Source: Takakia lepidozioides
Lineage: Eukaryota; Plantae; Bryophyta
DNA: 64,000 bases
Direction: 5' to 3'
Assembly (NCBI GenBank): GCA_030704615.1
Contig: CM060731.1
Location: 53,010,001-53,074,000, forward strand
Part shown: positions 25,134 to 52,318 of the stretch, in pieces
How the letters are laid out: each line of letters begins with the position of its first letter
How positions within the stretch are numbered: the first letter of the stretch is position 1
Notes under the pieces: generated by a model
Told to the model about the DNA's origin: nothing
Databases searched by the model: none
Seen by the model: the letters and a program-made list of their open reading frames with translations, nothing else
Position numbers and translations under genes: made by a program

Positions 25134-25351
25134 GGCCTCTGCCCCGCGCCTCTCATTTTAAGATAATAGGGTCTTCAATGGGCACGTGCGATGTGGCCAG
25201 TGGGCCCCGCGCACGGACGTCCGGCTCCCCAGCACCCCGCCCGCCGTTGCGCGCGGTCGCCCAGCCGCGGGCGCGGCTGCAGCAACCGCGCCCGCGCCCC
25301 CGTCCGCCGCGCGGCCAGTCCCCCGCCCACGAGTCCGCTGCCCTCCAGTCC

Positions 25352-25465
25352 GCCAGTCCGCTGCCCAACAGTCTGCCAGTCCCCTGCCATCCAGTCCAAT
25401 GACGGCGCAGGATCGCCACCGTCCATTCCCATAACCCATCCGAGCCCTCCATTTTTAGGGCTGCG
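25352..25465 (+). repeat. Left TIR of copy A (inner part; pairs with 37343-37467)
   Basis: gccagtccgctgccc...ccgagccctccatttttagggctgc versus gcagccctaaaaatggagggctcgg...gcagcggactggc. Confidence 0.9.
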
Positions 25466-25638
25466 AAAATGGCAATGATCTTCCCACCAAATCCCAGCCA
25501 CTCTCTATTGACGGCTGTTTGTTGTCCGATGTTGCGGTAGGCGTTTCCATGCACGCGACTGTTCCTCTTTTGCGCGCGATGTTCATGATGATGATGAAGC
25601 GTGTGCTTGAACATGAGAGGACTGTCTGGGCACTACAG

Positions 25639-25899
25639 CCACCATCGTGCATATGCTTCCACTATTTTTGCCTTCTTGTTGTGCTTTCGGGAACCTTCGT
25701 TTTATGGTTTGGTTCTATGTCATAAATATGGAAAATGCGGACATCTGTCGTCGATAACGTCCTCTGCTTGTGATCCGTCATGATACGTTTAGCCCCTTCG
25801 TACTGCATCCCTCATGAGAGCCTTCATAAGTTTAGTTCGTTAAAGGAACCCATGGGTAACATGGGCGCGAAAATGGTGGAAGCGTATGCACATGGGGGC
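25639..25899 (+). ncRNA. miRNA-like foldback 1 (copy A)
   Basis: Arm 25647-25668 gtgcatatgcttccactatttt pairs with 25870-25891 aaaatggtggaagcgtatgcac (20 WC + 2 G:U on the + transcript). Conserved in copy B. Expression unknown. Confidence 0.5.
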
Positions 25900-26087
25900 G
25901 TGTATTGCAGATTTCGTATCGGACGATGGGACTATTTATGGACCAGTATAGCGGCTTGCATCCGTCGTGCATAAGTTGTGGAAAAGGGTGGAGAATCTGA
26001 AAAAAAACCCAGCTTTGTGATGGATCCACATGGTATTATATAGGGATGGCAGCACAAAAAAGCAATCACGGAACACCATCCAGTCGT

Positions 26088-26195
26088 AAGGTCCTCAAAC
26101 ATCCACACGCACCTGCTGAATGCAGATGTCTGAGCCACGACGGGAGATGTCTGAGACAATTGCATCTGCAAATGCGCGTGGATGTTTGAGGTCCG
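26088..26195 (+). ncRNA. miRNA-like foldback 2 (copy A)
   Basis: ggtcctcaaacatccacacgca...tgcgcgtggatgtttgaggtcc. The same hairpin is present in copy B at 50564-50702. Confidence 0.45.
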
Positions 26196-26202
26196 TTGTG
26201 TT

Positions 26203-26848
26203 GCGAGTCTGTTCACAGTGGGTCCGCTGGCCCGTCAGTGCTCCGGATATTCCCCTTATCGCGTGCATAACAGTCAGTTTGGAGGCGGTCTGCTGGAAGT
26301 CCGTCTGTTGGGATAGCAATCTGTTGCACTTGTGAATTTGTCAGTCTGTTGTGTCGGAAGTCTGTTGCACTAAGTCTGTTTGACTTCTTATTTTCCCTCC
26401 GTTCAGTCTTTTGGCTTGTTCTCCCTCCCGCCAGTCTGGCGAAACGTCCGTCTGCTGGACAGTTCTCCTCTATGGATATCAGTCTGTTGGACTGTGCATG
26501 CATCAGTCTGTTGTGTCGCGAGTCTGTTCACACTGGGTCCGCTGGCCCGTCAGTGCTCCGGATATTCCCCTTATCGCGTGCATAACAGTCAGTTTGGAGG
26601 CGGTCTGCTGGAAGTCCGTCTTTTGGGATATCAGTCTGTTGCACTTGTGAATTTGTCAGTCTGTTGTGTCGGAAGTCTGTTGCACTAAGTCTGTTTGACT
26701 TCTTATTTTCCCTCTGGTCAGTCTTTTGGCTTGTTCTCCCGCCAGTCTGGCGAAACGTCCGTCTGCTGGACAGTTCTCCTCTATGGATATCAGTCTGTTG
26801 GACTGTGCATGCATCAGTCTGTTGTGCCGCGAGTCTGTTCGCAATGGG
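26203..26848. repeat. About 313-bp direct tandem duplication rich in AGTCTG
   Basis: gcgagtctgttc restarts at 26203, 26518 and 26829; the two units are nearly identical. Confidence 0.9.
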
Positions 26849-27460
26849 TGTGTTCGACTTTCCTGTTCTCCCCTTACTCTTTTTTGTCTTCATTCCACTG
26901 GCAGGGAAGTGCCTCCAATATGAAGCCGCTTCGCCTCAGCAAAGCGAATAGTCCGGTGGACTGGCGGTCCGATGGACTCTCGGCCCGATGGGAAATGAGT
27001 CTGCTGCACTTGCGAGGAGCGTGGATGAATTTAGTACGATCCGTTCGTTCGGTGGACGTATTCAATGCGATGACGGCGATAGTTGGCGCCTGTGAATCGC
27101 GCCACGTTGGCAGTGGCCATGCCCGCTTTCCCCCTTCTACTTCTACTTTCTCCATTCTCTTCGCGCCTGTTTCTTCGCACAGTTTTGATTGCTTTGTTTT
27201 CCTCTTTGCGTTTCCATCACCGTAACGAAAGACGACCGTTCTTCCCTAGGTGTGGAGAGTCGCGGTGAGCCGCGAAGCATCGCAAACACGCTCACCTTCG
27301 TAACAACTCGAAGTTCATCGGCTCGATGAGGTTCTCATTTGCTGCGGTGTTTCCATTCCATTCTGTGTCCTCTTCTTGCTTAGGGCGAGTCTTTTCATAG
27401 GACTTTTATCTGTCGCTCTGTCGCTCATTGTCCTTGCAACCTTCGTTTCATTCTGCAGCG

Positions 27461-30400
27461 ATGGAGGATGCTTGTGAAAAGGTTGAGCGGACTGGTTGGA
27501 TTTTGTGCACCAAACAGACTGAAGAAGGAGCGAAGGTACTGGTACTCACCAGACGAGTTTGATCATAAAATAGTGGAAGCATTTGTAGACCTCTGCGCCC
27601 GGAAGCCCAAAAACTCGAATTGGCAGAAGGACAAGCTCTTCTGTCCCTTTTGTGAAGAGGTAATCAAGGACAAAATCCAACTAAATCGGCATTGTGTTGA
27701 CACGGGTTGCAAGGAGACTGTTGCAATGATTCCACGGTAGTGATTTCAGCAGCCTTGGCCGATACTGAAAGAAATGTCGATTGTCAAAGAGCCCATGCGC
27801 TTGCGCGGATCAGTGCTTGATCCCCGCACTTTGAAATTAGACGAAGTGCGCGCACGGTATGGGGCGTCCATTGTGGTGCCCATCAATGGAGGATTTGCAA
27901 GTGCAGGACGCTGGACGCTCCCAGAAAATGTAAACTGAACTAGTGACGGGGCCCAAAAAAGGAGAGGCAAAAAAGGGAAGGCTGGAAGGTCTGCTCGCGA
28001 GGCAAGGGCAAAATCCACGCAACAGACTGAACCCCGTCATGGGTGGCAGACCCACACCATCAGTACTTATACTGAAAGTGAATCTGCTCAGGGCCTGGAA
28101 GGGGTGACAAGTCCAGTGGACATTGACTTGGCCTGACGAGACTCGCAGCAGACTCCACAAATATCGCGACCCATGCCATCGGTTTAGGGTCAAAACCAAA
28201 AACTCAACAGAGCACTAAAGGGCCAGTCTGCCCTGGCACATTGCGCCTCGTTGCTTTGGCTTTTCCCACTAGAGTGCCCACCAATGGGGATCCGACTTCA
28301 TCCGTTATTTCTACAGAGTTTGCCCAGTCAGGTCTGCTACGCACATTCATCCGATAGCGGAACAGAACTGGTTGAACAGCTTTGAAGATTAGATGACGAT
28401 GATGAAGTAGAGGAGGTAATGGTCAGTCTGACCGCCCAGTTCTGTTCTCTGTGCTGTTTGAGTCCATCATCGGGGTCACGTTGTCTTATTCAGGTCTGGT
28501 CTGGTCATTCCCTCTGCGTTTCTCCTCAGTCCGCTGGCTCTTCCGCTCGTCAGTAGTCTGTTTTATACTCGCTGCATACTTACTGAGTCCTTTTTCAGTC
28601 GCTAGTCCAGTCCACTGGTATAGTCTACTAGTTGCCTCCACCCTACGTACGCACGTTACAGTCTGCTGGTCTGTGAGTCCAGTCCCGCTGCATGAGGTGA
28701 AGATAGAGTCCACGTCCATGTTCCTGACGTCGAAGTTCTCTGCCGTATACCAGGATGAACGTGTTTCTATTCGTAGGGCCATTCAGGCTTGGCGGAAACC
28801 TAGCAATGATGCTCATTTACAAGCGACTGCAGTGCGTCGGAAGTGGACCGCGTGCGAGAGTACATATTAGTGAAGTATCCTGGGTCATCTGCTGCTATAA
28901 CGACATTACATATTGAAGACGCGTCGGGGAATGCGTCTGGGACAGCCGAGTCTGCCATCCAGTAGACTCCCATTCAGCAGCCGTCATCCAGCAGACTCCA
29001 GAGAGCAGACTCCCAACGAGCAGCCCTGTCATCCTGCAGACTCCTCTCCAGGAGCCATCATGCAGCCCATGCCAATGGAAGTCATGTCACCACAGACTGC
29101 GGACGCAGCAACTGCCTTTCTCTCACATAGCACGGCGTTTTTTGCAATTTGGCGATCGCCATCACCGATAATTCGCCCCGGAGCTGAAGACCTCACACTT
29201 CCCCGGCTTAGGATGGGAGAAATTATCCCATTTGGATTGGCATAATGAGCTCCCACGGATTGTTGCGGACCGCCGTTGGTCATTTGTACCCTTTCATTAT
29301 CCATGGGTTTTCTATTGAGGAAGCCAACCATGTTCTAGAAGCCGCCTCTGCTGGGCCATTGAAAACACACAAGCGACCAAAATGCGCCGCCTCTACTTGT
29401 GCAGCTGATTCTCATGGATGACCCACGGCCTGAAGACCTCAGACATATGCCTATGGCACATCCAATTTTTTGGGGTGCGAAGAAATCACTTGTTCGGATT
29501 GACTGAGGAGGACTTTTGAGCGCATGGTAGCTTCCTTCCTACACACAGATGGATGCAATTTGGCAATTTCCGCTCATACAAACAGTTGATGAAGGATCTG
29601 CATAGTTTGAGATGGACTTACTCCATTGAACCGACCATTCACAGAAGTTTGTGGTGGATGAGGCATTGCACTGGTTTCATTGGTGATGGAGCGAGCAGTA
29701 TTCGACATTGTTTTGCAGAATCCAATGTTTTCAACAGTCCTGTGGTTGGGATCGCCAACTGAAGACCCGCATCGGCGCCATTGCTCATCTCGATGGACGC
29801 ATGCCTGTGCCTGCAAATCAGGACATTGGCCTCGTCGGAATCTCGTGGAAGGAAAAGAATGGGCAACTTTCGTGTTTCAGCTCCGTTTCTTTTGCCTACG
29901 TTTTTACAAGTTCACTTGCATAACCTGTGTTGCAGGACGAGTTGATCTAGAGACAAGCAAGTTGCAGGCTGCTTTCAACGCTTTTGCCAGAGGGTGTCAA
30001 GGGACCTTGTTTCTGGCTTACAAGAGTTCGGGAGACTGTCCAGCAGACTGCCCACAAGAAATGTCGAACAACATATTCCCCACGACACATGTTGGGCAGA
30101 CTGCCCAAGTGCTGGAGACCGAGCATGTGCACCAAACCATCCCGGGTTAATAGGCCGATCACTCCCAGCATACTGCCCCCCCCCGCACACACATACTTCA
30201 GTATGTGCAAACAGTAACTGAGCGGTGCAGCGAACTTTGCAGACATTGCAGCAGACCGAGAACAGACCGGCCAAAACAACTGCCCCTCATCCTACTGTGC
30301 CAGCAGACCAGCAACATGGCCACCAGACTGCCCCTCAATCAACTATATCAACAGACCGTGCGGGCAGACCGACCAATCCGCCCAGCAGATTGCCCTCATC

Positions 30401-33139
30401 AAGACCGTGCGCAGACCGACTAATCCAGCCAGCAGATTGCCCCTCAGGCAATACTGTGCAGCACACTGGCGAACCTACTCATCAGATGGCCGAGCAGACT
30501 ATCCGGAGACTAACAGCTAGTCTGTTCCTGATCGTGCAACAGACTCGGATGCACTGGCCTCACCGGGACCCTGTGACGAATTTCTGCTGGTTCCCACAAC
30601 ATGTTTTTGGATCTGCCAGTATGAGTGTTTTGAAACCGAGTCACTTTTCCCCCCAGGCACATTCACTGACGACGTCATCAGGTCACCGGTAAAGGCATTC
30701 TTATTCCCACTCCCCGTGGCCTGCCTTCTTTGACCTCCAAGTTAGTCCAGTTTTCGTGCGCTCATGGCGAAAGCCATAGATGAGTCCTACGTGTGACCGA
30801 ACTCAATCTGGGAACGCAAAACCTTTCATGATCTTACAAAAGAGTCTGAGGAGCAATTGCCCCCGGTGGGTCTTCCATACTAGTTCTTGATGTTCCCAGT
30901 CCATGGAGATCCGAACACCCAGCCGCTGTCCACCAAGACTGACCATCACACTGAACAGTGGACACATCCGCAGACTAACCAGCAGACTGCACAGGTCACA
31001 GATGGAAGGACTGACCAGGATGCTTGGAGTGGCAGACTGCACAGCTCAGCTCTGACTGCACAGTTCAGATTGCACGGCATGACCAGCACACTGCACACTT
31101 CACAGAGGGAAGGACTGACGACCAACTGCCACCGAGCACATTGCCCACATTGAGGAAGAGACTGAACCGCAGAGTTGCCAGCAGACTGCACAGTTCACAG
31201 ACGAAGAACCGGCGGCCGAGCAGACTGCCCACATTGAGCAACAGACTGAATATGCTGGCAGGCACACTGACAAGGAACCACATGTGCGCAGACACCGTCT
31301 GGTATAGCGCTGGATTACATGGAGTCTGCTCCCTCACCCCTTGGGCAGGTTGTGCTTGTTTATGTTTTAGCACATTGTGAAATTGGACTAATTCGACATT
31401 TTTCTCGGTATCCTCACAGGATGTTCGTCCCTCCGTCGGCAGACTGTCTACTTCTGAGGACATGACATCTTTCCGCCCATGCTGCAAAGGGGATCGACAG
31501 CCAAGAAAGGTGTGGGGTGAGCACGCCCCTCGATGCGCGGGTCAGTTCTACGCATGCGACCCACGAAGCTGCAAAGACAGGTCCAGCAAGTGTAAACAAC
31601 CTGCTGACCAGCCTCTGTTGCGAAAAGGGGGCAGCAGCGCTGCGTTTGTCTGCTCTATCCAGCCCGCCTACAGCTGTCCCTGCTTCCCAGGGGAGAGGCA
31701 AAGCCAAGAAGCGGCACTGTCGTGGACCATGCTGAGGAGGTCGAGGAGGGTCCGAGTACCAAGAGACCGGCGAAGAAAAAGTCTGGCGTCTTTATGAACA
31801 AGAACCGCAAGCTGGCCTTGGACAGAAGTCTGGCGTCTTTATGAACAAGAACCGCAAGCTGCCTTTGGACATGAAACGAAGATGTGGGTCGTTTCCGTGG
31901 AGCAGCTGTGCTCAAGTCTGGCCTCGCGTCTTTGTCGTTAAGTGCTTTGCGATCTGTTGTGGTCAGTCTGCTGCTGGTTTCATCATTGTCTGTTGTGGTT
32001 AGTCTTGTCAGTCTGATGAATTGTTCAGCCTGTAGAGTGTTTGGTACCATGTTGATGTCAATCTGTTCAGTACATGAGGCTTCCCGAAGGATGGTCTGCT
32101 CTGTGCAGGATGGGTGCTCGGTTTTGGCAAAGCACATGCTCTGCACGTGAAGGCAGGTAATTCCATGCTGATGTTTTTTGAAGGGGACCCACGGTTTGAA
32201 TGCGGACTTTCGCCGGATGACATAAAGGCGGTCCAGAAGGTTGAGTCGGAGTGCACAGATAGACTCCTGGAGCTGTGGTGTCGATTCTATGAGAAGTCGG
32301 TTGAGGCTGCATTCATCAACACTATTGCTATTCTTCCAACGTCGACGTGGACGGTGTTGAAGTCATTGGGGGTGGGGCAACATGAAAGCCTTCTGGAGGT
32401 CTTGAAAGGTTGCCTCAGCACTGAACGACTGGGCAAGGACTTGAAAGAGTGCGATTTCATTTTGGTACCAATTGGGGACGAGTAAGAACTCTTCTGAGTC
32501 TGCTGAGACTGTCTCCGGAGTCATAGTCTGGTTTCGTAGTGTCGTCTTGACTTTGAGCGATTAAGTTGACCTCTGTATTTGTGCAATGGACTGGGTTTGA
32601 AGATTGAGTCTGCTGAGTGCTGAGTCTGCTGAGTGGTCGGTCTGCTGAGTGTCAGTCTACTGAGTCTGCCCATCATGATTGTGCAATGACGCCATGTTGT
32701 TTGATACCATTGTAGGGGGCACTAGAGTGTTTGTATCATCGACCTCCGCAAGGGCTGTTACACTCACCTGAACTCTATCAGGGACTTACATAAATGTCCC
32801 TTTGTTCTAGGGTGGATTCGGAAGCTTCATGCGCAGTGCTTAGGGTACTCGATGGACTCACCAGAGTGGCATGAGATTGTCCAAGCATTTCAGTTCCACG
32901 CGCCTGATGTGCCCCAGCAACCATTCAGCTGGGAGTGTGGCTTTTACGTCATGTCATTCATTCAAGTGTTTTATGAGTGGGTAAAAGTCAGAGCAAATGT
33001 CTCCAAGACTGCAAAGCCAGAGAGAGGAACACCTTTCACGAAGGACTGGTTTACTTTCAAGTTTGCACTTGGGCAACGATTGCAGTGTGCCCAGTATATC
33101 GTGTGGGGGTTGGACAATGTAGAGAAACTGCTCTCATGA
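27461..33139 (+). pseudogene. Copy A accessory gene: N-terminal C2HC zinc finger, unknown central domain, Q/T-rich linkers, C-terminal Ulp1/C48-type cysteine protease (disrupted)
   Basis: MEDAC...; CPFCEEVIKDKIQLNRHCVDTGC; WMQFGNFRSY; CDFILVPIGDE/GH*SVCIID...QQPFSWECGFYV. Several frameshifts and stops relative to copy B. Confidence 0.85.
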
Positions 33140-33186
33140 GTATGATGTACTTGTCATGTGAAGTCTATGTACCGAAATCAAGGGGA

Positions 33187-34251
33187 ATCTGTCGTATGAG
33201 GTCAAAATACCCGAAATGACATGAATTTCTTGACTATATCGAACAGTACTGGAAGCCTAAAATAGCAATGTGGTGTACAGCAGCCCGCAATGTCCCTCAT
33301 GCGAGCCAAGACACAAACGCAAGCATTGAGGCATACCATGGAAATCTGAAGGCAAGACTTGCCATGGGGAAAGGCAAGATGAGTGGTCGTAGAGTGGACT
33401 GGCTTATATGGGAACTCACTGGCCGTGTGCTAACACACTACTGGTACGCAATCCATTTGAAGACCCACGGGTTCATAAGAAATGACAAACATGAAAAGTA
33501 CATATCCAGTTCTATACTTGCGGCACGAGACATTCCTGCTGAGAGTGTTACTCTTCCCTTGGGTCCTGGTGAACCAGCCTACGTTCTCAGCAGCAACCAC
33601 CCCAGCACAACATACATTGTTTACAATCCTGATTGCGATTGGGGTTGTTGCACGTGCCCATGGGCAATGAAGGGAAACTTATGCAAGCATCAGGTCCGTG
33701 TCCTGAAGATGCTTCACCCTGACCTGGAGGATGGCCTCCTTGTGCGCGCTTGTGGCACGGCGCTGGGAACCATTCATGGAGGATTACCTAACTTGCTCTT
33801 GGGCAATAGTGCCGGCGGCATCGACGAATCCAATCAGTTCATGGAAAGACATCCTCCGGATGACTTCCCCTATGACGAGGCACCTCTGCAGGTCTCAGCC
33901 TCATTGGAACAAGAATTCACGGACATACTTCGCATTGTAGGTGATGACAAATACCTGGAGGCACATGCCCGATCTGCTCTTCATATGTGCAGAGGGCAGC
34001 TCGTTGATATCCTGGCAAAAAGTGCGGCTGGAATGTTGCACCCTGCGGCAGCGAAGGCTTTCCGTCCTCTGAACGACAACAACAACATGTCTCTGAAAAG
34101 GAGACGAGATTTCGTGGAGGCCTGGAAAACCCGGCCTAGGGTTTTGCGGAGAACCAGCAAGAGGGTGTCTGCACCTGCACCTGCAGCACATATATACTCG
34201 AAAATTTGCAAGGTTTCAGGTCGTGTAGATGTCATGAAAAAGACAATATAA
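33187..34251 (+). pseudogene. C-terminal half of copy A transposase (catalytic E and SWIM finger), lying inside an inversion
   Basis: ICRMRSKYPK*HEF...WKPKIAMWC...SQDTNASIEAYHGNLK...RVDWLIWEL...CTCPWAMKGNLCKH, collinear with copy B 40630-41689. Confidence 0.9.
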
Positions 34252-34395
34252 GTCTGCAATGCCTCGAAAACAGACAAGGTTTCACGTCGTGTAGGTGTCA
34301 CGGAGAAGACAATATAAGTCTGCAATTCCTCAAAAAGAGACAAGGTTTCATGTCGTGTAGGTGTCACGAAGAAGACAATATAAGTTTGCAATTTC
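34209..34395. repeat. 66-bp tandem repeat x3 spanning the transposase stop codon
   Basis: caaggtttca at 34209, 34275 and 34341. Confidence 0.9.
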
Positions 34396-34882
34396 TTCTG
34401 GTAGCATTGTCCCTTTCTGAAATACAAGTCCGCAATGGACTAATGCATAGTCTCCCAATGGACTCCTCCAGTCTCCCAACTGACTCCCACACAGTCTCCC
34501 AAGCATAGTCTCCCAACGGACTCACGCACAATCTCCCAACAGAGTCACAGTCAACAAACTGCGAGCGCCAGTAAGCCAGTCTGCTGCCCACTCCAAAAGT
34601 CTGCTCACCACACTTCCACCTCATCCCTACAACTTATGCCAATCCAGCGTCCCAGCGGACTCATGGACATGGTGCCTCCCAGACTAGGTACCAGACCCAG
34701 CAGTCCTAGCCTCGGCAGTGTATTGCTCGCACATTCAAGCTCAGCAGACTCGGGTGCACAGTGCATGGAAAAATTGACACCATTGTGTCCATTGAGTTTA
34801 GTGACAACATTACAAAACATGCCAGCACCCACAGTACACAAAAATGCTCATCACCACTGGAATAGTACGCGAAAAGACTCAC

Positions 34883-41689: not shown

Positions 41690-41779
41690 AGTAGGAAATG
41701 TAAGAAATGGTACGGTATCATTCTCCCCATGAAATAAAATTTCGGCGATACGATTGCATGTGCACCAGACGTCCAACCT

Positions 41780-41930
41780 GTCTACCAACCAGCCTGGTAA
41801 ACCAGTCTTCTGGCGTCTGAACCAGTCTGCTCAATCAGTCTTCTGCCGTCTGATCCAGTCTGCTCATCCAGTCTTCTGGTGTCTGAACCAGTCTGCTCAA
41901 CCACTCTTCTGGTATCTGAACCAGTCTGTT
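41780..41930. repeat. 33-bp tandem repeat between the convergent genes
   Basis: ccagtctgctca..cagtcttctg units repeated about 4 times. Confidence 0.8.
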
Positions 41931-42579
41931 GTACCAAGCTGGGACTCACTCTTCAAACAGTCTGTTGTGCTAGCCTTCTCCTGAGCAGACCAGTCTCCCG
42001 GTTCTGAACGTGTCTACACTTGGCTGACCAGTGAGCCTCATGCGGTTTGCCCATCAGACTAGCCATTCTCAGCACGGTGGACTCTCATTACTCTGCTGAC
42101 CAGACTTGGCAGTCTACTGGCCAATGCCATCCGCCTGTACTATACCACTCCAGTGACTCTCGACAGTCACCAGTGCAGACTCATGGTTCCCAATCGCATC
42201 TGCCAGTCTGCCGGACTGGTCCCAACTCCTCAATCTGTCGGACTCTCGTCAGTCTGGCGACATTGCCATCTGTCTGCTCACAAGCCTAGGCATACCCTCT
42301 TCCCGTACTCTGGCAGTCTGCTGACTCTCAGCTGTTTGCTGACCAGTGGACTCCCTTGGTATGTTAAACAAAATGATTGTGTGTGCAGAGGTAAGTCCGC
42401 TTAACAACATGCGGTGATTTGGTCACAAATCTACAGCGACTACTCCACACTGCACTCATATGCGACCAATAGGATGTGTATACAAAGTCATATTTTATTT
42501 CGTTGCAAATGCTCAAAAGCATGCTTATATGACAGATGCGTCCTATGGTGCACCTCTAATCTCGGACCCAGATGGATAT

Positions 42580-45500
42580 CTATGAGGATACTGCTTTCTC
42601 AGCAGCACTCAAACCAATCAAGATGTACTTAAGACACTGCATCCGTTGGCCAAGTGCAAACTTGAACGTGAACCAGTGTTTCGTGAAAGGTACTCCTCTC
42701 TCTGCCCTTTTAGAAGAGGTTTGAGTATGCCCAGTTTGTAGCCATTCATAATATTCTTGGATGAAGGACATGACGTAAAACCCGCATTCCCAGCTGAATG
42801 GCTGTTGGGGCACTTCAGGCTGGTTGAACTGAAATGCCCTAACCTCCTCCCAACCCGGTGAATCAACACTGTAGCCTAAACACTCCACATGCAGCTTCCG
42901 TATCCATGACAAAACATATGGGCAACCATGCAAAGACTCGATGAAATTCATGTGAGTGTAGAAGCCTTTCCACACGTCGATAACAACAACACTCCAGTGC
43001 GCCCTGCAAGACGAATCTCATGACTCTCACATCAACAGTCCACTTAGCAAACCACTCCAATTGCCTCTCCAGCAGACTCTACAGACTCCCACACTACACG
43101 GGTCCCACTACACTCAGCCAACTCGGCAGAGTCACGACTCAGCAGACTCAGAAGACTCATCACCCAGCAGACTCGGCATAATGAGCAGACTCAGCAGACT
43201 CGGCATACTCGGGGTTGAGTGAGCAGACCGAGCAGACTGTCCTCATTCAAAAGACTGGGCAAATTTGCCAGACTGAGCAGGCGAGAGGCAGGTGTGAACG
43301 TAGTGGCGTCATTCAAAAGACTGGCCCGACAGAACAGACTGGGTATGTGAGATCTTACTCCTCCACAATCGGAACGATTATATGATGGTAGTCTTTTATG
43401 TCTTTGCCGAGCCGAGGGACGCTCCAGCAAGAATGCAGATACTCCACTAGCCTTTCCCGTGGCCCGTCCCAATGTGTCATCATACGAGACCACGTTGAGG
43501 CTGGCAGAAGAGCAACAGTACTTGAGTAATTGTCTTCACCGTCTTCTCATAGAAACGACACCACAGCTCCAGCATTCTATCTGTGCACTCTGACTCCACC
43601 GTCTCAAGTGGCTTTAAGTCCGGAGGCCTGATGGAGCACTCATACCGGGGGCCGCCTTCATAAAAGTGAACTATGCAATTGCCGGCCGCGACATTCCGTC
43701 GCAGGGCCATTGCAAAACGAGAACCCAACCTGCACACAGACCACGAACTTGTGTGAAAACCCATGTACGCAACGGTCTGAGCGGACTGACTCGATTCAAC
43801 AGACTGCCCATACCAAGCAGACTGAGCGGACTCGCCAGACTCACCAGACCGAGCAGACTGAGCAGATTCACACTTCGGAGCAGACTGGAGTGACCAGACT
43901 CAGCAGACTGGGATGACTACTCACTGGTGCATTTCTCGCTGAAGAACCACTTCCTTGTCCGTATCCAATGCCATTTTGCGGTCTTTGTTCATGAAGACAG
44001 CATACTTGCCTTTCTTCGCAGGTTTCTTGGCAACATGACCCTCCCGAATTTCCTGAGTCTGCTCCACGACAGTCCGCTTCTTCGCTCTACTTGTGCCCAG
44101 GGATTCGGCGACTACTGTGGCCGGGTTCGATTCAACAGACTGACGAAATGATGCGGTCCTGCTTCGCAAGACGACTGTGTCTGCAGGCTTGTTCATACTT
44201 GTAGGACCTGTGCTGGCAGCCTCACTGGTCGCATGCGTTGAACTAATCCGTGCATCTGTTGGCGTTGTAAGTAACCTTGGGGGGTGCACTCTTTATAAAA
44301 TGTCTATATCACGTGCGTTCGCCGCCTAATAAAAAAAACCCCTGTATACGGGTCCTTGGATCATTTATACCCCCTCTGTACATACATTTTGAAGATTATA
44401 AAATCCCCTCCTGTAAAGAAATTTGTAATTTAAAAAAAGTACCCCCTGCTGTATGTATATTTCTTTTTTGAATCATTAAAAAATACCCTCAAATATGTAT
44501 ATATATATTTTATTATATCAAGTTTATTCATTTAAAAACAGACCTCGGCCTGTACTACTATGTAGGTCCAAATTTTATGAAACCAAGTCGGTGCATCCCT
44601 ACTCATTGAGGGCTTTCCAACGGTACCAAAATCGTGGCTAGAGGCCCTTCGGTTTGGGAGATCTCAAGGACCCTACAAACAATATTGTGTTCATGCCATA
44701 TTCGAAAAAAAAACCCAATTATTTACATTTATGTCCCCGTGTACAAAGGATAAATAAATGGCCAGTAATTGTTGAAAGAAAGCCCATTTTGCTATTTTTC
44801 GCGAGTTTCCAACGACCAAAAGTACTTGAAATTTCATATCTCCCACACTGCAAGTTCCAAAATTATGAGACCAAGCCAGTGCACCCCTCCTCATTGAGGG
44901 CTTTCCAATGGTACCAAACACCAGGGCTGGGCCCCGCGGTTGGGGAGATCTCAACAATGATACAAAACAAAATATTGTCTTTATTGTATATTACTGTTTA
45001 ACATTATAATTGTTTCAAGAACCGTGGACCAGCCTAGTGGTATGGAGATGGTCGTGGTGTGCAGGTGGTCTTGGGCCCAAATCTGCATTGTGATATATAC
45101 ATATTTTCAAAGTTTTCGAAAAATTCAAGACACCGTGAGATTTGAACCTGCGATGAGAGTCGTGGCAATGGTGACCCTTACCACTACGCTACCCTCCTAA
45201 TCAAGCTAATCCCTTGCTATAGACTTATATTTAAGGTGTTGCTTTACCCCCCTATGTATGTATAATGTTGTACATGGGGGGGTTAAAAATACCCCCTCCT
45301 GTGTACGCACGTGGCTGGTACAGGTTGGCTGGGGTGCACCCCCCAGGTAAGTAACCCACCTTTTTTGGTTGACTGCAGGGCACAACCTGTATGACGTCAT
45401 TGGAAGGAAGCGACTGGGCAGACTGCTCCCCTGCTTGAACGTCAATCAGTCTGTGCTGCTCAGAGCGGTTAGCCTGGTGCTCAGTCTGCTCGCCGCTATG

Positions 45501-48500
45501 GTCAGTCCGCTGTCAAGTCTGGTGGACACTCTTGTGTGCGGGGGGAACGACATGTTGGCCCTTAGTCTATCCATGTTCGGCATCGGTCTGCTGCTCAGTG
45601 TCCTCAGTCTGGCCAGTCTAGTGCTCAGTCTACTCGCCGCTCTGGTCAGTCTGCTATCGAGTTGGTGGATACTCTCGTGGGCAGGGCGAATGGCATGTTG
45701 GCCTTCCTTCAGAGGACCATGTTCAGCGTTAGTTTGCTGCTCACTGTCCTCAGTCTGGTCAGTCTGGTGCTCAGTCTGCTTTTTGCTCTGGTCAGTCTGC
45801 TGTTCAGCCTGGTGGTCACTCTCGTGGTCGGTCTGCTCTTGCAGGGAGGAGATCAATCTATCAACTTGCAAGTCAACTGTGTCTTCAGGGTTTGATGCAT
45901 AAAAAGCTTGACTACCGCTGACATCTAAATTATCCGCGACAACTACATCGTCTAGTTCTTCAGTAAGGTCAATGATACGGGGTTGAGTTCCCATATTGCG
46001 ATCAATCACGTAACAATCATCTATAGCTTTCGCAAGCGAACGAACCAAAACCGGGCTGAGCTGAAATGGAAATAGTTGGCAGGCCATGGGTCACTGGAGA
46101 AGAATGGTTTACCGGTGCCCAGCTTATATCCTCAAACGATGCGCCAATTTTTGAAGATGGTCCGGCGGGAAAAGAAGACGCCGTCAATGCACTGATAGAA
46201 CTCCGCACAAATTCAGAAACAGGGTCCCATTGAGGCCAGTGCAGCCGACTCTGTTCAATGAACCAGGATCCAGACTGGTGGACAGGAAGTGTAGTTGGGT
46301 CCTCCGAGTCACTGTGGTCGTGAATCTGCTAGACAGTCTGCAGGGCACTGTCATTGTGGTGACTGCTTTCAGTCTGCTGGACGGTCTGCTCAATGGTATG
46401 CTGCACAGTCTGCTGGTGCACAGCCAGGTCATCCGTCTGCAGCCCGGTCTGCTCATTGATATGTTGGACGGTCTGCTTGACAGCGACGTCATCGGTATGC
46501 TGCATGGTCTGGTGCAGAGATATTCCTTCAGTCTGCTCGCCGGTCTGCTCATGAGTCTCCTCGTCCTCGGTGTGGCCTGTAGTGCGCCCACTCTCCTGAA
46601 CAGTGGCTGGGATAGTGTTGACAGTCTGTCCATGCTCTTTTTGTTGCAGTGGGTCAGTTTGCTCAGCAATGGCGTCGTCAGCAGTCTGCTGAACGGTGTC
46701 ATGGAGTCCCTCTAACGCCAGCACAACATCTCGTGCACCTCTGGCAAGGGAATCGAAAGCACACTGCGCGTGCTCGTCTAAATCAGACATTCCTGAAACA
46801 GATGAGTTGGACAAAGTGAGTCTGACAGGATGGTGGAAGAAAAGACCATGAACTTCACAACGGTCCAGAAGAAGTCGGCATTACCTTCTAGGAGGTTGCC
46901 AATGAGACCAATATCTTGGATTTGGCGTCCCAAGCATGCTCCATCGAGATGGCGAATCGTTGGCATGCGGTTTTCAAATAGGGAGCCGCACCATAGGACT
47001 TTGAACACATCCGGTCTGTTCAACACAATATCGAACACTGCTCGCTCCATTACCGCAGCAAACCATTGCAACGCCTCATCCACAACACTCTTCTTACCCG
47101 CATCCGAATCTGAATGAAACAAATACTTCCTCAAACTTTGCATGTCCTTTACCAATTTACTGTATGAACGGAAATTGCCGAACTGCATCCATCGATGGTG
47201 AAGGAAAGAATTAGCAATGCGATCAAAGTACTCTTCAGTAATTCCAAGCAAGTACTTTCCCCGCACCCCAAAGGTGGGATGTGCCATGGGCATATGTCTG
47301 AGTTCCTGAGGTCGTGGGTCATCCATGAGGATTAATTGGACAACAGTGGTGGGGCATTTTGGACCTTTGTGACTGCCAGGGCCACAAAATGTGCGCTTTC
47401 GAGGACTTCATTTGCTTCTGCCATAGTAAATTCCATGGAATAATGAAAGGGAACAAAAGGCCACCGGCCGTCCGTGACAATGCGATGGAGTTCATTATAC
47501 CAATCCACATTGGAATTGACTTCCCCCACCCTCAGACGGGCAAGTGTCAGGTCCACAGCTTCGGGATCAATGAGCGGCAATGGCGAGCGCCAAACTCCAA
47601 AAAATCCCGTGGTGGTCGTGACAATGAGAGTCTGCTGGCTGGGAGTCCGCTCAATGGGAGTCTACTGGCTGCGAGTCCGTTGGACAACAGTGTGGTGGAT
47701 GGGCGTCTTCTGGGTGGCAGTCTGCTGGTTGGGAGTCTCCTGAATAGCAGTCTGCTGGATGAGAGTACGTTGGACGAGAGTCTGGTACATGGGAGTGTGC
47801 TGGACAAGACTGCGTTGACTGTGAGTTTGGTGGGAAAGAGTCTGCTGGGCAAGAGTCTGCTGGATGCCAGATTGGGTGAGGTCTGTGTCCACTGAGTCTG
47901 CAGTGAGTATGGTGTTGATCGGGGAGTTGGCGCGTGCTTTGTCTGCAGAGTCCAGTGCTGCTATGGCGTCTGCTGAGCCAGGGTACTTAAACAAGATGTA
48001 CTCCCGCACCCGCTCCATTTCCCGGCACACCGCATTCACTGCTAAGGGAGGGTCGGACCTCACCATCCGCCAAGCACACAAGGCCTCCCGAATACTGGCT
48101 CGGTCATCCTGGTATATGACAGAAAACCCAAAAACTCAGCATCAGACTCACTAGCAGCAGACTCACGAGCAGACTCACCAGCATCGTGGCACAGAACAAA
48201 GGAACCAGCGGACTCCAGGGACTGACGAGCAAGTCCACAAGCAGGGGACTGACCAGCAAGTCCACAAGCAGACTGGCGCAGCAGACCGAGCAGGTAGACT
48301 GAACCAGCAGACTCTATGACAATAGACACCAACTGTGGGGACAGACTGGGCATTACCTCGTCGTCATCGTCGACATAGACGTCCTCCTCATCTTCAAGGG
48401 AGCTCGACTGGTCAGGCAAGACAATGTCGACGAGAGATGAGACACTTCCCAGACCTGCGAATTCATCATTCCGAATGATGTCTGCAGATGGCTCAGTAGA

Positions 48501-49141
48501 CTGGCTCTCACTCAAAGTACTGATGGTCTGCGTCTGCTGCGTAGACCGTCTCCCTGGCACAGCCCGTGACACTTCCCGACTGCCTTGGGGACGAGTCTGC
48601 TGTTGAGATTTTGCCCTCGCCTCCCGAGCAGACCTTGCAGCCTTTTCTCTTTCCTTCTTCTGGGTCCCATCACTAAGTTTCCTTTTTCTGGGAGCCACAG
48701 GTGATGGCGATGTCAGGTCATGCACATCTTGCATTGAAACATCCGAACCCACCCCATACCGTGCGCGCACTCCGCCAAAGTGCGGGCCTTTGGGTTTGCG
48801 CCACGGAGTCTGGCGGTGGCCGCATTCACCACCCTCATTGAACTTTGAACTGGCCACGGCTTGAAGCCAGGTGGGATATATCGCTTGTTTTTGCAGCCCG
48901 TGTCAACACAATGGCGGTTTAGCTGCACTTTGTCCTTGATAATTTCACTACAGAAAGAACAGTGGAGCTTATCCTTCTGCCAGTTGGAGTCTACAGGCTT
49001 GATTGCGCGGAGGTCTAAGAATGCTTCGACTATTTTTGCATCATACTCCTCAGGTAAGTACCAGTACCTTCGCTCCTTTAGCCTGGACTTGTGCATGAAA
49101 TGCAACCAGTCTGCTCCACCCTTTGCACAAGCATCCTCCAT
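42580..49141 (-). pseudogene. Copy B accessory gene: C2HC zinc finger, unknown domain, low-complexity linkers and Ulp1-type protease, interrupted by a MITE
   Basis: MEDACAKGG...CSFCSEIIKDKVQLNRHCVDTGC; MDDPRPQELRHMPMAHP...WMQFGNFRSY; GHWSVVVIDVWKGFYTHMNF...QQPFSWECGFYV. Frameshifts present. Confidence 0.85.
44277..45346. mobile_element. Non-autonomous AT-rich DNA transposon (Mutator-type MITE, 1070 bp)
   Basis: TIR (T/C)TGGGGGGTGCAC at both ends. Perfect flanking direct repeat GTAAGTAACC (44267-44276 and 45347-45356). Absent from the homologous position of copy A (about 31515). Confidence 0.92.
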
Positions 49142-50563
49142 GGCTGCAGAATCAGACAAGAGATGCAGCGGCAATGAGCGACAGACAGACTAAGAATAAG
49201 AAAGCAGAGAAGAACGGAAAAGAGAATGGAAAGAAACCAAAGCACAAAACACAAAGAGGAAAGCTCACCGGGCAACATGCGACGGTTGTTGCGACGATTC
49301 GGTGCTCACGCGACTGTCCGCACCTCGAAAACCTAACACGCACCAAAGAAAGCGGGCTCGCACCAATGGGAGGTGGACGGGCCCTAAACGAAACAGTACG
49401 AAAGAAGTCCAGCGGGAAGTGGACCCTGCACCGGCGCCCTTTTTTGGCCGTCATCGCATTAAATAGTTGCAGACCCCTCACACGTGCTGGCGGTATGCCA
49501 CTGTACGGACAGTCCAACAGACGGGATGAGTGGGACTATCGTCAGTCTGCCGTCATCGCATTCATCAAGTCCAGCAGACTTACTCCTGATGACAAAGACG
49601 GCCAAGCAGACCGAGTACCCTCCACAAATAGACTCATATGCCACAGTAAGGACAGACTGACGACTGAGGTTAAGCGGACTGACGAAGAGACTAAGGCGAG
49701 TGCGGAGTCTGGTGCGGAGTCTGATGACGTGCCGCGACGTGACTGGGCCTCCTTACCGCCGTCGCTGCATTTATTGCGTCCAGCAGACTCTAATGACATA
49801 ATGGCCGAATAGACCCACTGCAAACAAACTTGCGCAACAACAGACTCGTATGCCACTGCACGGACAGTCCAGCAGACGAAAGGTTCAACAGACTGATGAA
49901 GAGACTGGCGCAGAGTAATTTGCGCAACAACAAAATGATTTCTAACAGACTAATATCTTGGATGACAAAGTATCCCCAGGGCGGCCGGGTGATACGGGAG
50001 TAAACCGTAAACCGCGTCCAGCAGACTTACACGTGATAATAATCACGGCTCAACAGACCCAGCGCAAACATACTTGCGCCACAGTAGACTGACTTTGTGA
50101 CAGTCCAGCTGACTGATATCAGAAGAGACGGACAGACCAACAGTCCGACGGCTCAGCAGACTCACGGTAATGCGGATAATTAAAAGGTAGTAGTTAAACG
50201 GACTCATATCCGAAGAGACGGACTTCCTGCTGACCAATGGTTCAACAGACTGATGAGAGAAGAGACTTCGGGGATAAGACAAGAGAAGACACTTTGGAAT
50301 TCGGCAGACAGTGACGGCCCAATAGTCCAGTGAAGAACAGACTCACGCCACACCATACTTGTATCCTTACAAACCAACAGTCCAACAGACCAGACTAATA
50401 TCCCATCAGAACCACGCTTGGCGTCGCCGTCATGCCGTGGTTGCATTTCATCCGTCCAGCAGACTTGCATATGCCCATACTCATGGCACAACACACTGCT
50501 TAGAGAAAGTACTGACAAAGACGCAGTCGAAGAGCCTGTTGATCCACGCGCATTTGCAGTCAT

Positions 50564-50702
50564 AAGGACCTCGAACATCCACAAGCAACGTGAATCCACA
50601 TCTCTCAGCCTACGTTTCCTTTCCCATTGTCCAGTTTTCAAGGAGACGGTAGTGGTTGAGATGTGATGTTTCAGGAGGTGCATCTGGATGTTTGAGGACC
50701 TT
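50564..50702 (-). ncRNA. miRNA-like foldback 2 (copy B)
   Basis: aaggacctcgaacatccac...cacatctc...gagatgtg...tggatgtttgaggacctt. Confidence 0.45.
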
Positions 50703-50814
50703 TGGACTGGATCCTGTTCCGTTCACATTCTCCGCAGTTCCCAGACATGTGGTGGCAGAGATGTCCTCCCCTGAACAGTCTCATCGGTGGACATAAATTC
50801 TGCAATGTATACAC

Positions 50815-51010
50815 GCCCCCACGTGCATATGCTTCCGCGATTTCCGCTATCGTGCTACCAATGGTTTCCTGCTCCATACGAATGAGCTCGGACTCGGAGA
50901 CACACCACAAACCGTAAACGCATGCAATTTTTCCACATATCGTCCTAAAAAATAAGCACGTCAGCACAAAATGAAGGCGAAAATAGTGGAAGCATATGCA
51001 CGATGGTGGC
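50815..51010 (-). ncRNA. miRNA-like foldback 1 (copy B)
   Basis: 50822-50846 pairs with 50977-51002. 50980-51010 is identical over 31 nt to the copy A arm. Confidence 0.5.
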
Positions 51011-51352
51011 TATAGAGCCCCGCCAGCCCTCTCATGTTCAGGCACACCCTTCATCGTCATTAAAATCGCCATAAACAAGAACAACAGCCGCATGCGTGCA
51101 AAGTCACCTCCGCAACATTGGACAACAAATAGCCGCAAGAACGAGACAACAAGAACGAGTGGGCGAGTTCGTGGCAGGGTGTTACGATCTTCCATGCCCT
51201 AAACATGGATGGCGCGGATGGGTTTCTCAGAATGGACGATCCAGATCCTTCGGCCGGCGCGGACTGGCAGACTGGCAGACTGGGGGGCAGCAGACGGGCA
51301 CAACGGACTGTTGGGTGGACTTGCGGGGACTGACACAGTGGACTGGCGTGCA

Positions 51353-51851: not shown

Positions 51852-52318
51852 NTATCAAAGTGGCATGCAAACAAGTCTATCTGACGACAAGCTGCTGCTT
51901 GCTATACCTATCTTCTCTACATGGTGTCTTAGAAACAGCTACACAGGCGCCAGCAGGATAGTCCATTCAGCTGCGATAACAGTCCAGCTGGCACTACAAT
52001 GACCTACGTGGACGAATCTAGTCACTAATTGACCTACGTGTACTTTACATTGTCACCTTACAATGCTAAGCTGGAAGTGACTTGGCAAGTCATTACGCAA
52101 CTGACTAACAAGTCAATTGAGACACTTCACAGTGAAGAGCGAGGCCAAGGAGGCAGCCTCCTAGACTAGTGCACCTTCGACAGTCGAGACAGACGGACGA
52201 AATGCGTGGTAAAGGAATAGAGAGTGCATGGAGATTGATCAGTGTTGCGCATCGTCAGGATACACATCTTTTGCAAGTCCTTCGGTATGTGATGTGTGCT
52301 CTGCAATTCTTTCACTGG

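What the first reader, a model, noticed from the sequence alone, without database searches (positions are those of the whole stretch)
25134..51352. Large two-gene Mutator-like family whose transposase resembles the At1g60560/At4g13970 SWIM host genes, packaged with a ZnF-Ulp1 gene, motif arrays and hairpins
Seen: two diverged TIR-bounded copies with identical architecture (TIR, hairpin region, ZnF/unknown/Ulp1 gene, convergent transposase, TIR). Recalled, not searched: the transposase follows the Arabidopsis SWIM proteins At1g60560/At4g13970 motif by motif (IPxxRVxxF, YxCxxGP, RGCxCxFxV, GIQTxWQ, DxTFG, FIxDDA, SQxxxxxIEAYH, RVDWL, GNLCKH). As I recall, At1g60560 lacks the MULE CxxH motif, whereas copy A keeps D, D, E and CLWH. 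Inference: this could be the mobile progenitor lineage of that domesticated family, with its own regulatory module. Ulp1-carrying MULEs are known (KAONASHI, VANDAL), but I do not know one with this transposase clade.
Basis: partly seen in the sequence, partly recalled or inferred. Interest (0 to 1): 0.85.

Follow-up and report, generated by a model that had tools for sequence, protein, structure and literature searches.

The report
Two decayed moss-type Mutator transposons
The region holds two broken, head-to-head copies of a many-copy plant jumping gene that carries an extra zinc-finger/protease gene. Its transposase belongs to the same old lineage as two conserved flowering-plant genes of unknown function, but it is a cousin of them rather than their direct ancestor.

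Summary
Window 25.3-51.35 kb holds two Mutator-like elements lying head to head: copy A (about 25332-37467) and copy B (about 37495-51352). Each has 130-150-nt terminal inverted repeats, a spliced DDE/CLWH/SWIM transposase gene and a convergent zinc-finger/Ulp1 (Peptidase_C48) gene. Both are packed with the word AGTCYGC (139 of the window's 148 hits).

Both copies are dead:
- A has a 1.7-kb inversion through transposase exon 4 and private stop codons.
- B has a stop, a D-to-N change at the first catalytic Asp and a 162-nt deletion.

Contigs from public runs show many near-identical copies that lack the inversion and two of the stops. A and B differ by dS of about 0.9 with dN/dS 0.1-0.3, so both genes were under selection.

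The recalled link to At1g60560 holds. The transposase matches AT1G60560-like proteins at E 1e-23 to 1e-36, and those host proteins have lost the CxxH histidine. In both trees, however, the host genes sit nearest Taxus and Cryptomeria sequences (support short of the star threshold), not this clade (AU p = 0.15, unresolved). No target-site duplication (TSD) can be read here. Related metagenome elements have 8-9-bp TSDs.

The scan had already noted this kind of element on other DNA of this genome (12 At1g60560-type notes, 79 Ulp1 notes). Verdict: new variant of a known kind, moderate interest.

The parts
25332..37467 (.). Copy A, about 12.1 kb. Minimum extent is set by its TIR pair. 25134-25331 is GC-rich with no partner at the right end, so its membership is open.
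25332..25464 (+). Copy A outer TIR, built of AGTCCGC-type words
   Evidence: 99% to 37343-37432 over 90 nt, plus a further 32 nt at 91%
37343..37464 (-). Copy A inner TIR
   Evidence: alignment A1
26090..26194 (+). Conserved hairpin upstream of the ZnF-Ulp1 gene in copy A
   Evidence: MFE -61 kcal/mol, z = -6.0; the homologous place in B (within 50570-50715, minus strand) has z = -2.9
26191..26849 (+). Two direct repeat units of about 311-315 bp (96-97% alike), rich in the motif
27461..33139 (+). Copy A ZnF-unknown-Ulp1 gene (multi-exon, approximate limits). It is broken by a frame change near the N-terminus and a stop at 32723-32725 directly after the catalytic His.
   Evidence: tblastx A against B; Peptidase_C48 8.7e-9 on 32726-33136; every contig reads G at 32724
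33179..34890 (.). Inversion private to this copy (or to this assembly). It carries transposase exon 4b (33179-34251, plus strand) and the former intergenic DNA with 66-bp repeats.
   Evidence: Joints 33178|34889 and 33179|34891 on opposite strands occur in contigs of X1, X2 and X5. The un-inverted join reads in frame.
34891..37198 (-). Copy A transposase, N-terminal three quarters. Exons 1/2 run 37198-36014 (one in-frame stop at 36764-66), exon 3 runs 35774-35575, exon 4a runs 35072-34891. Intron 3 (35574-35073) holds a 12-bp x 11 array.
   Evidence: tblastn of Adiantum, Riccia and Perilla proteins; GT-AG sites; TRF
37495..51352 (.). Copy B, at least 13.9 kb. Its outer end is cut by the N gap at 51353-51852.
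37495..37635 (+). Copy B inner TIR unit 1. A second, more diverged TIR-like unit follows at about 37632-37760.
   Evidence: 91% to 51204-51352; alignment A1
51204..51352 (-). Copy B outer TIR, truncated by the assembly gap
37934..41689 (+). Copy B transposase gene. Exons 1/2 run 37934-38958, exon 3 runs 39048-39247, exon 4 runs 40441-41689 (CLWH, E, SWIM). Defects: about 162 nt missing (equivalent to A 36645-36820), a stop at 38767-69, and first catalytic D replaced by N (ACNATFG).
39248..40440 (+). Transposase intron 3 of copy B, with a 100-bp x 6-8 tandem array (39431-40228), each unit holding several AGTCCGCTG words
   Evidence: GTAAGT...CAG. A related element, L002, has exons 3 and 4 contiguous. 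TRF.
42580..49141 (-). Copy B ZnF-unknown-Ulp1 gene (approximate limits). No stop was seen in the conserved exons. H, D, Q and C of the C48 site are present.
   Evidence: Peptidase_C48 1.1e-7 on 42583-43017; tblastx; dN/dS 0.16-0.31

Best explanation
The region is two independent, now dead insertions of two related sub-families of one Mutator-like (MULE) lineage of a moss-type land plant. They lie head to head with their inner TIRs 30 bp apart.

What each element encodes (shown):
- A transposase with an N-terminal Cys/His region, an RNase-H-like DDE core carrying the Mutator C-x2-H signature, and a C-terminal SWIM finger.
- On the other strand and converging on it, a multi-exon gene for a C2H2-like zinc finger, a conserved region of unknown kind and a Ulp1/SENP-type cysteine protease domain.
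- The elements are multi-copy. Their divergence ran under purifying selection on both genes. This transposase clade makes TIR-bounded insertions with 8-9-bp TSDs in other genomes.

How it most likely works (inferred): intact relatives move by cut-and-paste. The transposase binds the AGTCYGC-type words that make up the TIRs. The ZnF-Ulp1 protein is a selected helper, possibly a sequence-guided anti-silencing or chromatin factor in the manner of VANC/Kaonashi. It may read the same word, which also fills the introns and spacers.

Evolutionary place (shown): the lineage belongs to a land-plant-wide MULE branch found in liverwort, fern, conifers and unnamed metagenome plants. That branch also contains two angiosperm-wide host gene families, AT1G60560-like and a 'zinc ion binding' family. 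These keep D, D, E and SWIM but have lost the C-x2-H histidine. The window's family is a cousin of those genes.
For: Layout, TIRs and gap:
-.

Transposase gene model:
- tblastn of five full-length relatives gives collinear exons in B, and the same exons in A apart from the inverted piece.
- Canonical GT-AG sites sit at the same places in both copies.
- Intron 3 is proved by the intron-less relative L002.

MULE nature:
- PF10551 passes its cut-off in relatives: Adiantum 44.1 bits, Riccia 29.1, P0004 28.7.
- Window exon 3 alone gives 17.9 bits.
- The D, D, CLWH and E columns align.

Ulp1 gene:
- Peptidase_C48 is found in both copies.

Selection between A and B:
- dN/dS is 0.09-0.32 for the transposase, 0.16 for the ZnF exon and 0.23-0.31 for Ulp1, at dS 0.8-1.1 for five of these six exons; transposase exon 3 has dS 0.33.

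Copy number and private damage:
- 3,766 contigs of run X1 lie on 5.9 kb at 95% identity or more.
- The un-inverted joints are seen in X1, X2 and the independent study X5.
- Every contig reads G at 32724; most read G at 33217 (all in X5).
- 48 of the 75 window-against-contig differences are window T or A against contig C or G.

Motif:
- 139 of 148 hits lie inside the elements.

Host-gene link:
-.

Mobility of the clade elsewhere:
- L084 is 9.4 kb with 127-nt TIRs and a perfect 9-bp TSD.
- L074 is 7.0 kb with an 8-bp TSD.
- L045/L048 is 10.6 kb with 120-nt TIRs, a 9-bp TSD matching at 7 of 9, and a convergent decayed C48 remnant.
Against: - No TSD can be read in the window. A's inner end abuts B, B's outer end is in a gap, and A's outer limit (25134 or 25332) is unsettled.
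- No intact copy was seen directly, so activity is inferred from contig abundance and similarity only.
- The RNA evidence is five contigs of a run whose RNA nature is a guess (X6).
- No protein-DNA binding has been tested, and the motif's reader is unknown.
- The Ulp1 partnership is not general in the clade. Of 86 fetched loci, only L045/L048 show a C48 trace, and L002's convergent genes are unrelated.
- The inversion could be an assembly error, because no contig was shown to bridge the window's own arrangement.
Confidence: 0.85

Rival explanations
1. The window's family is itself the direct mobile progenitor (sister lineage) of the AT1G60560/At4g13970 host genes.
For: Homology runs along the whole protein. 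The element keeps CLWH where the host genes have lost it. The AU test does not reject window clade plus host clade as one clade (p = 0.154).
Against: Both independent half-protein trees place Taxus and Cryptomeria nearer to the host clade (86/48 and 88/91); only the C-terminal tree also puts Adiantum and Riccia P0018 there. The window clade is a separate starred group. The held-together tree is 11.3 lnL worse. Host genes are known here only from angiosperms, which makes a seed-plant source more economical.
Confidence: 0.12
2. The 26 kb is one giant foldback or composite element (two inverted arms), or an assembly artefact, rather than two separate insertions.
For: The two halves are mirror images meeting at 37465-37494. 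An N gap touches the right end. The genome holds other notes of 'giant foldback MULEs' (unchecked).
Against: The arms differ by dS of about 0.9 and share 72-87% nucleotide identity. Each arm's own TIR pair is 91-99% alike. The arms carry different private lesions. Contig depth differs about fourfold between the A and B parts. These all fit two elements of different sub-families.
Confidence: 0.05
3. These are host genes of the plant (a domesticated SWIM gene next to a ULP protease gene) lying in repeat-rich DNA, not transposon genes.
For: There is purifying selection between A and B. Angiosperms do have host relatives.
Against: Both copies have stops, a rearrangement and a catalytic D-to-N change. 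TIRs bound each copy. Thousands of near-identical contigs exist. Relatives elsewhere have TIRs and TSDs.
Confidence: 0.02

Closest known systems
Kaonashi (KI/KIU) MULEs and VANDAL elements of Arabidopsis; CUMULE and the rice and grapevine C48-MULEs
   Same: A Mutator-type transposase plus a second gene with a Ulp1/Peptidase_C48 domain. Short sequence words are repeated through the non-coding DNA, as at VANC targets (literature: PMC4948706, PMC13317346).
   Different: Here the TIRs are long (130-150 nt) where VANDAL/KI elements are largely non-TIR. None of the Pfam models for the MuDR-type or FAR1-type N-terminal domain gave a hit. The transposase belongs to a separate, bryophyte-to-gymnosperm branch. 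The C48 domain is fused to a C2H2-like finger and an unknown region. No VANC homologue was looked for. The cited review dates the KI capture to around the monocot-eudicot split, which would make this an independent or much older capture.
AT1G60560-like 'SWIM zinc finger family protein' and the 'zinc ion binding' (probably At4g13970) family of angiosperms
   Same: Homologous over the N-terminal Cys/His region, DDE core and SWIM finger (27-36% identity). D, D, E and SWIM are retained in both.
   Different: The host genes are low-copy in the hit lists and 62-88% conserved across angiosperms (Amborella appears only in the second family). They have R in place of the C-x2-H histidine. I saw no evidence of TIRs, but their loci were not examined. 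The window's genes are multi-copy, TIR-bounded and keep CLWH, and they fall outside the starred host clade.
MUSTANG and FAR1/FRS (known MULE-derived host genes)
   Same: The same evolutionary pattern: a MULE transposase lineage with both mobile and domesticated descendants.
   Different: The FAR1 DNA-binding domain was not detected. Only 615 library proteins reach E 1e-3 with the C-terminal half, far fewer than the FAR1 or MuDR families would give. No direct tree was possible.
Unnamed relatives: Taxus chinensis cluster P0072 (18 members at 90% or more), Adiantum P0013/P0036, Riccia sorocarpa paralogues, metagenome elements L045, L074 and L084
   Same: The same transposase branch. Several are multi-copy or bounded by TIRs and TSDs.
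   Different: They share 26-47% identity with the window. Their accessory genes differ or are absent. Only L045/L048 show a C48 remnant.

Membership tests
Mutator/MULE superfamily | DDE RNase-H-like core recognised as the MULE domain (PF10551) | tested here: met
   Relatives pass the cut-off (P0013 44.1 bits, P0018 29.1, P0004 28.7). Window exon 3 alone gives 17.9 bits, E 0.0044. The domain is split by intron 3 and the exons were not joined. The catalytic columns align.
Mutator/MULE superfamily | [C/D]-x2-H signature between the second D and the E | tested here: met
   CLWH in both copies, aligned with CLWH of Adiantum, Riccia P0047 and P0004
Mutator/MULE superfamily | Long terminal inverted repeats | tested here: met
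   A: 122-133 nt, 99% over the 90-nt core. B: 141-149 nt, 91%.
Mutator/MULE superfamily | Target-site duplication of 8-11 bp | tested here: inconclusive
   It cannot be read in the window because of abutting ends and the N gap. Related elements have it: L084 9 bp perfect, L074 8 bp, L045/L048 9 bp matching at 7 of 9 in register.
Mutator/MULE superfamily | C-terminal SWIM finger (CxC...CxH) | tested here: met
   CTCPWAMKGNLCKH in both copies. Pfam SWIM gives 17.6-18.0 bits, just under the 19.6 cut-off.
KI-MULE / VANDAL (Kaonashi type) | Second gene with a Ulp1/Peptidase_C48 domain | tested here: met
   PF02902 at 36.0 bits (A) and 32.3 bits (B) against a cut-off of 20.7. The H, D, Q and C residues are present.
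KI-MULE / VANDAL (Kaonashi type) | mudrA/VANDAL-clade transposase with a MuDR-type N-terminal DNA-binding domain | tested here: not met
   No Pfam family beyond MULE, ZSWIM1-3_RNaseH-like and SWIM was found in ten full-length relatives at E 0.1 or less. Nothing of the kind appeared in the N-terminal pieces at E 5 or less. No VANDAL sequence was available for a tree.
KI-MULE / VANDAL (Kaonashi type) | Absent or very short TIRs; VANC-type gene | tested here: not met
   TIRs of 130-150 nt are present. VANC homology was not tested.
AT1G60560 / At4g13970-type host (domesticated) genes | Falls inside the conserved angiosperm clade | tested here: not met
   The host clade is starred 100/99 without the window rows in both trees.
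AT1G60560 / At4g13970-type host (domesticated) genes | Loss of the C-x2-H histidine; low-copy and not TIR-bounded | tested here: not met
   The window keeps CLWH where the host genes read xxWR. It is multi-copy with TIRs.
FAR1/FRS-Jittery lineage | FAR1 DNA-binding domain at the N-terminus | tested here: not met
   No such hit in the window pieces or in relatives

The most novel reading that the evidence does not exclude
A MULE branch spread through bryophytes, ferns and gymnosperms is the unrecognised source of two angiosperm-wide SWIM genes of unknown function. In this plant it has independently built a VANC/Kaonashi-like self-protection module: a ZnF-Ulp1 protein that reads the AGTCYGCTG word coating the element's TIRs, introns and spacers.
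Probability: 0.2. Interest if true: 0.75.

Novelty: new variant of a known kind. Interest (0 to 1): 0.5.

Why it matters
Two genes conserved in many flowering plants (AT1G60560-like and the 'zinc ion binding' family) have no described function. No paper in the searchable library ties them to transposons. This analysis shows three things:
- They sit inside a living MULE branch.
- They keep D, D, E and SWIM.
- They have specifically lost the Mutator C-x2-H histidine.

This dates and frames a probable third large MULE domestication beside FAR1/FRS and MUSTANG. It also supplies mobile relatives for comparison.

Separately, a Ulp1-carrying, motif-coated MULE with a different transposase clade, outside the flowering plants, bears on how often such helper modules arise. 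dN/dS of 0.16-0.31 across dS of about 0.9 is direct evidence that the helper gene is selected as part of the element.

Tried and rejected
- Pfam on single exons gave only sub-threshold MULE and SWIM hits.
- The search for homologous proteins with the 411-aa exon found only 3 proteins because of its length filter. The exhaustive library search was needed instead.
- The Atlas look-alike search on the unknown middle region gave nothing. On the ZnF exon it gave only weak C2H2/DUF629 leads, all under 0.9.
- Rfam found no family anywhere in the window.
- I looked for the ZnF-Ulp1 gene next to relatives. L002's convergent genes have no Pfam hit and only an E = 0.001 resemblance. tblastn over 86 loci found only the L045/L048 remnant.
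- The remaining ORFs of L074 and L084 are too decayed to scan.
- Literature: At1g60560 and At4g13970 each occur once, in unrelated papers. They are absent from the text and supplements of the exapted-TE phenotype paper. Hoen & Bureau 2015 is not held, so prior listing there cannot be excluded.
- The search of earlier findings by sequence was blank.
- The RNA runs held next to none of the words.
- A foldback or single-element reading and a host-gene reading were considered and rejected (see rivals).


Full report
LAYOUT

A self-comparison of 20-56 kb shows two mirror-image halves. Blocks from 25508-37389 match blocks from 51138-37740 in inverted order at 72-87% identity. The exception is 33205-34199, which matches 40649-41646 in direct order.

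Each half has its own terminal inverted repeats:
- Copy A: 25332-25464 against 37343-37464, 99% over a 90-nt core.
- Copy B: 37495-37635 against 51204-51352, 91%.

A five-way alignment of the ends shows a shared TIR of about 170 nt built of AGTCCGC-type words. B's inner end carries two such units in tandem.

A run of 500 N (51353-51852) begins exactly where B's outer TIR is still running. A's inner TIR and B's inner TIR are 30 bp apart. So the elements are TIR-bounded, but neither the exact tips nor a TSD can be read here. Nothing else in the window resembles the elements.

GENES

Pfam finds Peptidase_C48 in both copies: A 32726-33136 on the plus strand, B 42583-43017 on the minus strand. It finds only sub-threshold SWIM in the long transposase exon.

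The transposase model comes from tblastn of five full-length relatives:
- In B it has about 37934-38958 (exons 1/2), 39048-39247 (exon 3) and 40441-41689 (exon 4).
- GT-AG sites sit at identical places in both copies.
- Intron 3 (39248-40440 in B, 35574-35073 in A) is proved by a related metagenome element, L002, in which exons 3 and 4 are contiguous.
- This intron holds the 100-bp x 6-8 array in B and the 12-bp x 11 array in A.

The joined-CDS search and fold were left out.

The second gene converges on the transposase. tblastx between A and B recovers a chain of conserved exons:
- a start (MEDAC...);
- a C2H2-like finger (CPFC...H..C);
- several exons of unknown kind;
- the C48 domain with H, D, Q and C in place.

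BOTH COPIES ARE DEAD

Copy A:
- The C-terminal 340 residues of the transposase (catalytic E, SWIM) lie on the plus strand, while the rest is on the minus strand.
- The breakpoints are 33178|33179 and 34890|34891.
- Rejoining them on paper gives an in-frame reading, LRWVARGICRMRSKYPK*HEF. This is collinear with B's LAWVATTLRRMRKKYPNGHEF.
- A also has stops at 33217-19 and, in Ulp1, at 32723-25 directly after the catalytic His (H*SV against B's HWSV). There is a frame change near the Ulp1 gene's start.

Copy B:
- It has a W-to-stop change at 38767-69.
- It has Asn where the first catalytic Asp should be (ACNATFG against A's ACDTTFG).
- It lacks about 162 nt, the equivalent of A 36645-36820, which includes the YQCCYGP motif.

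THE FAMILY IS LARGE AND THE DAMAGE IS PRIVATE

I laid contigs of four public runs on 32500-38400.
- Run X1 (same coded organism) placed 3,766 contigs at 95% identity or more. About half were 99% or more alike.
- The A part had several-fold more summed depth than the B part.
- Both joints expected for the un-inverted arrangement (33178|34889 and 33179|34891, opposite strands) occur in X1, X2 and in X5. X5 is a plant metagenome from a different study, with 254 and 67 letters on the short side.
- At 32724 every contig reads G (TGG, Trp); at 33217 most do, all in X5 (GGA, Gly). These two stops are therefore private to this copy.
- Of 75 places where the window differs from the contigs, 48 are window T or A against contig C or G. 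This is the signature of C-to-T decay.
- I could not show a contig that bridges the window's own inverted arrangement, so an assembly error is not excluded.
- RNA evidence is negligible. The RNA-labelled runs hold next to none of the words, and X6 gave five contigs.

SELECTION

A and B differ by dS 0.8-1.1 in five of the six gene pieces listed (0.33 in transposase exon 3), with dN/dS as follows:
- transposase exon 2: 0.09
- transposase exon 3: 0.32
- transposase exon 4: 0.20
- ZnF exon: 0.16
- the two Ulp1 exons: 0.23 and 0.31

They are therefore two old sub-families. Both genes were kept functional along most of the path between them. This is the best evidence here that the ZnF-Ulp1 gene is a working part of the element and not a passenger.

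WHAT THE TRANSPOSASE IS

phmmer of the 411-aa exon against 1.84 billion representatives gave 615 hits at E 0.001 or better.

Named full-length hits:
- Adiantum (730 aa).
- Many Riccia sorocarpa paralogues.
- A Taxus chinensis cluster of 18 members at 90% identity or more, spread over several chromosome-scale records.
- Cryptomeria and Mesostigma.
- Angiosperm proteins called 'SWIM zinc finger family protein'.

A search from the Perilla protein returned a family of about 715-725 aa. It is 71-88% conserved from Magnolia and Nelumbo to the eudicots, and it includes a Hibiscus entry named 'like AT1G60560'.

A second family (about 650-1200 aa; Amborella, Magnolia, eudicots; 62-88% conserved) is called 'zinc ion binding' by several sources. 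I recall this as the TAIR description of At4g13970, but I could not verify it.

Domain evidence:
- Pfam gives MULE above its cut-off in Adiantum, Riccia and P0004.
- It gives only faint MULE and ZSWIM1-3_RNaseH-like scores for the AT1G60560 type.
- No FAR1-type or MuDR-type N-terminal domain appears anywhere, even at E 5 or less.
- A total of 615 hits is far too few for the query to belong to the FAR1 or MuDR families. By PMC8599713, FAR1 alone counts 18,744 genes in 80 species.

CATALYTIC COLUMNS

- First D: D in A, N in B. It is kept in both host families.
- Second D: kept in both copies and both host families.
- C-x2-H: CLWH in the window, Adiantum, Riccia P0047 and P0004. The AT1G60560 type reads SLWR/CLWR/SVWR and the second family reads CFWR/SFWR.
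- E (IEAYH) and SWIM: kept in all angiosperm host rows and both window copies.

TREES

The C-terminal tree has 41 rows and 373 columns.
- A and B are sisters (100/100) inside a starred 11-row clade of unnamed Logan, JGI and ENA proteins.
- The two angiosperm families form a starred clade (100/99).
- Taxus and Cryptomeria join them next (86/48).
- Adiantum follows (92/86), then Riccia P0018 (88/79).

An independent N-terminal tree of 25 rows agrees. The host clade is 100/99, Taxus and Cryptomeria join it at 88/91, and the window with L002 stands apart on an unresolved backbone.

Forcing window clade plus host clade together costs 11.3 lnL, with p-AU 0.154. This is not rejected.

Reading: same branch, cousin lineage. 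The direct progenitor claim is not supported but not excluded. No MuDR, FAR1 or MUSTANG sequence was obtainable, so the trees are unrooted within the branch.

MOBILITY OF THE CLADE ELSEWHERE

A metagenome scan found 206 relatives. Three elements have TIRs flanking the transposase and adjacent duplications:
- L084: 9.4 kb, 127-nt TIRs, GTTTCATGG on both sides.
- L074: 7.0 kb, TTTTGACA on both sides.
- L045/L048: 10.6 kb, 120-nt TIRs, GCTACAAAG against ATTACAAAG in register.

L045/L048 also carry, about 2 kb downstream and convergent, a decayed C48 remnant reading QQEFD*ECGFYAIKF. Other loci show no C48, and L002's convergent genes are unrelated. The Ulp1 partnership is therefore lineage-specific within the clade.

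MOTIF AND HAIRPIN

AGTCYGC occurs 148 times in the window, 139 of them inside the elements. It makes up the TIRs, the intron arrays and several spacers.

A hairpin of about 105 nt upstream of the ZnF-Ulp1 gene folds at z = -6.0 in A. The homologous place in B gives z = -2.9. Which protein reads the word is untested.

CONTEXT

The scan's notebook holds 12 first-reader notes of At1g60560-like transposases and 79 Ulp1 notes in this genome. Several follow-ups call the organism moss-like and the layout VANC-like. I used these as leads only.

The literature knows C48-MULEs in angiosperms (PMC4948706, PMC13317346). The 2019 MULE survey lists no bryophyte clade (PMC6446971). No searchable paper links the two Arabidopsis genes to transposons. 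Hoen & Bureau 2015 could not be read.

VERDICT

This is a real but decayed pair of MULEs. The homology to the AT1G60560-type host genes is confirmed, the progenitor claim is weakened to cousin, and the helper-gene and motif function is inferred only. It is a new variant of a known kind, with interest 0.5.

Noticed in passing
window 290-1976: A 1.7-kb array of a 10-bp word (CACAGCCCGT, about 135 copies; GC 63%, strong skew). It may be the motif coat of a different element, like the motif-saturated MULEs noted elsewhere in this genome.
   Followed up: no
window 51353-51852: A 500-N assembly gap begins inside copy B's outer TIR, so the assembly broke in the repeat. What lies beyond, and B's TSD, are unknown.
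   Followed up: partly
window 25136-25331: A very GC-rich stretch with an internal 31-nt palindrome (25266-25296), directly outside copy A's matched TIR. It has no partner at A's other end, so it is either a longer TIR lost on the right or flanking DNA.
   Followed up: partly
window 55349-55682: Three to four diverged tandem units of about 100 bp (TGCCTACATGGAGAGG...), unrelated to the elements.
   Followed up: no
P0072 cluster (Taxus chinensis): Eighteen proteins at 90% identity or more, on several chromosome-scale records. They are the nearest named relatives of the angiosperm host genes in both trees. The gene model lacks the second-D/CxxH stretch. This may be a recently amplified deletion derivative.
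   Followed up: partly
L002/L003/L004 (ENA metagenome contigs): A related transposase without intron 3, followed by three conserved convergent ORFs (476, 304 and 117-154 aa). These have no Pfam family and no C48, so the same transposase clade carries a different accessory set.
   Followed up: partly
window 36761 / 38324: One X5 contig joins these two homologous places of A and B on opposite strands. It is most simply a third copy that matches A on one side of B's 162-nt deletion and B on the other, not a real foldback.
   Followed up: no
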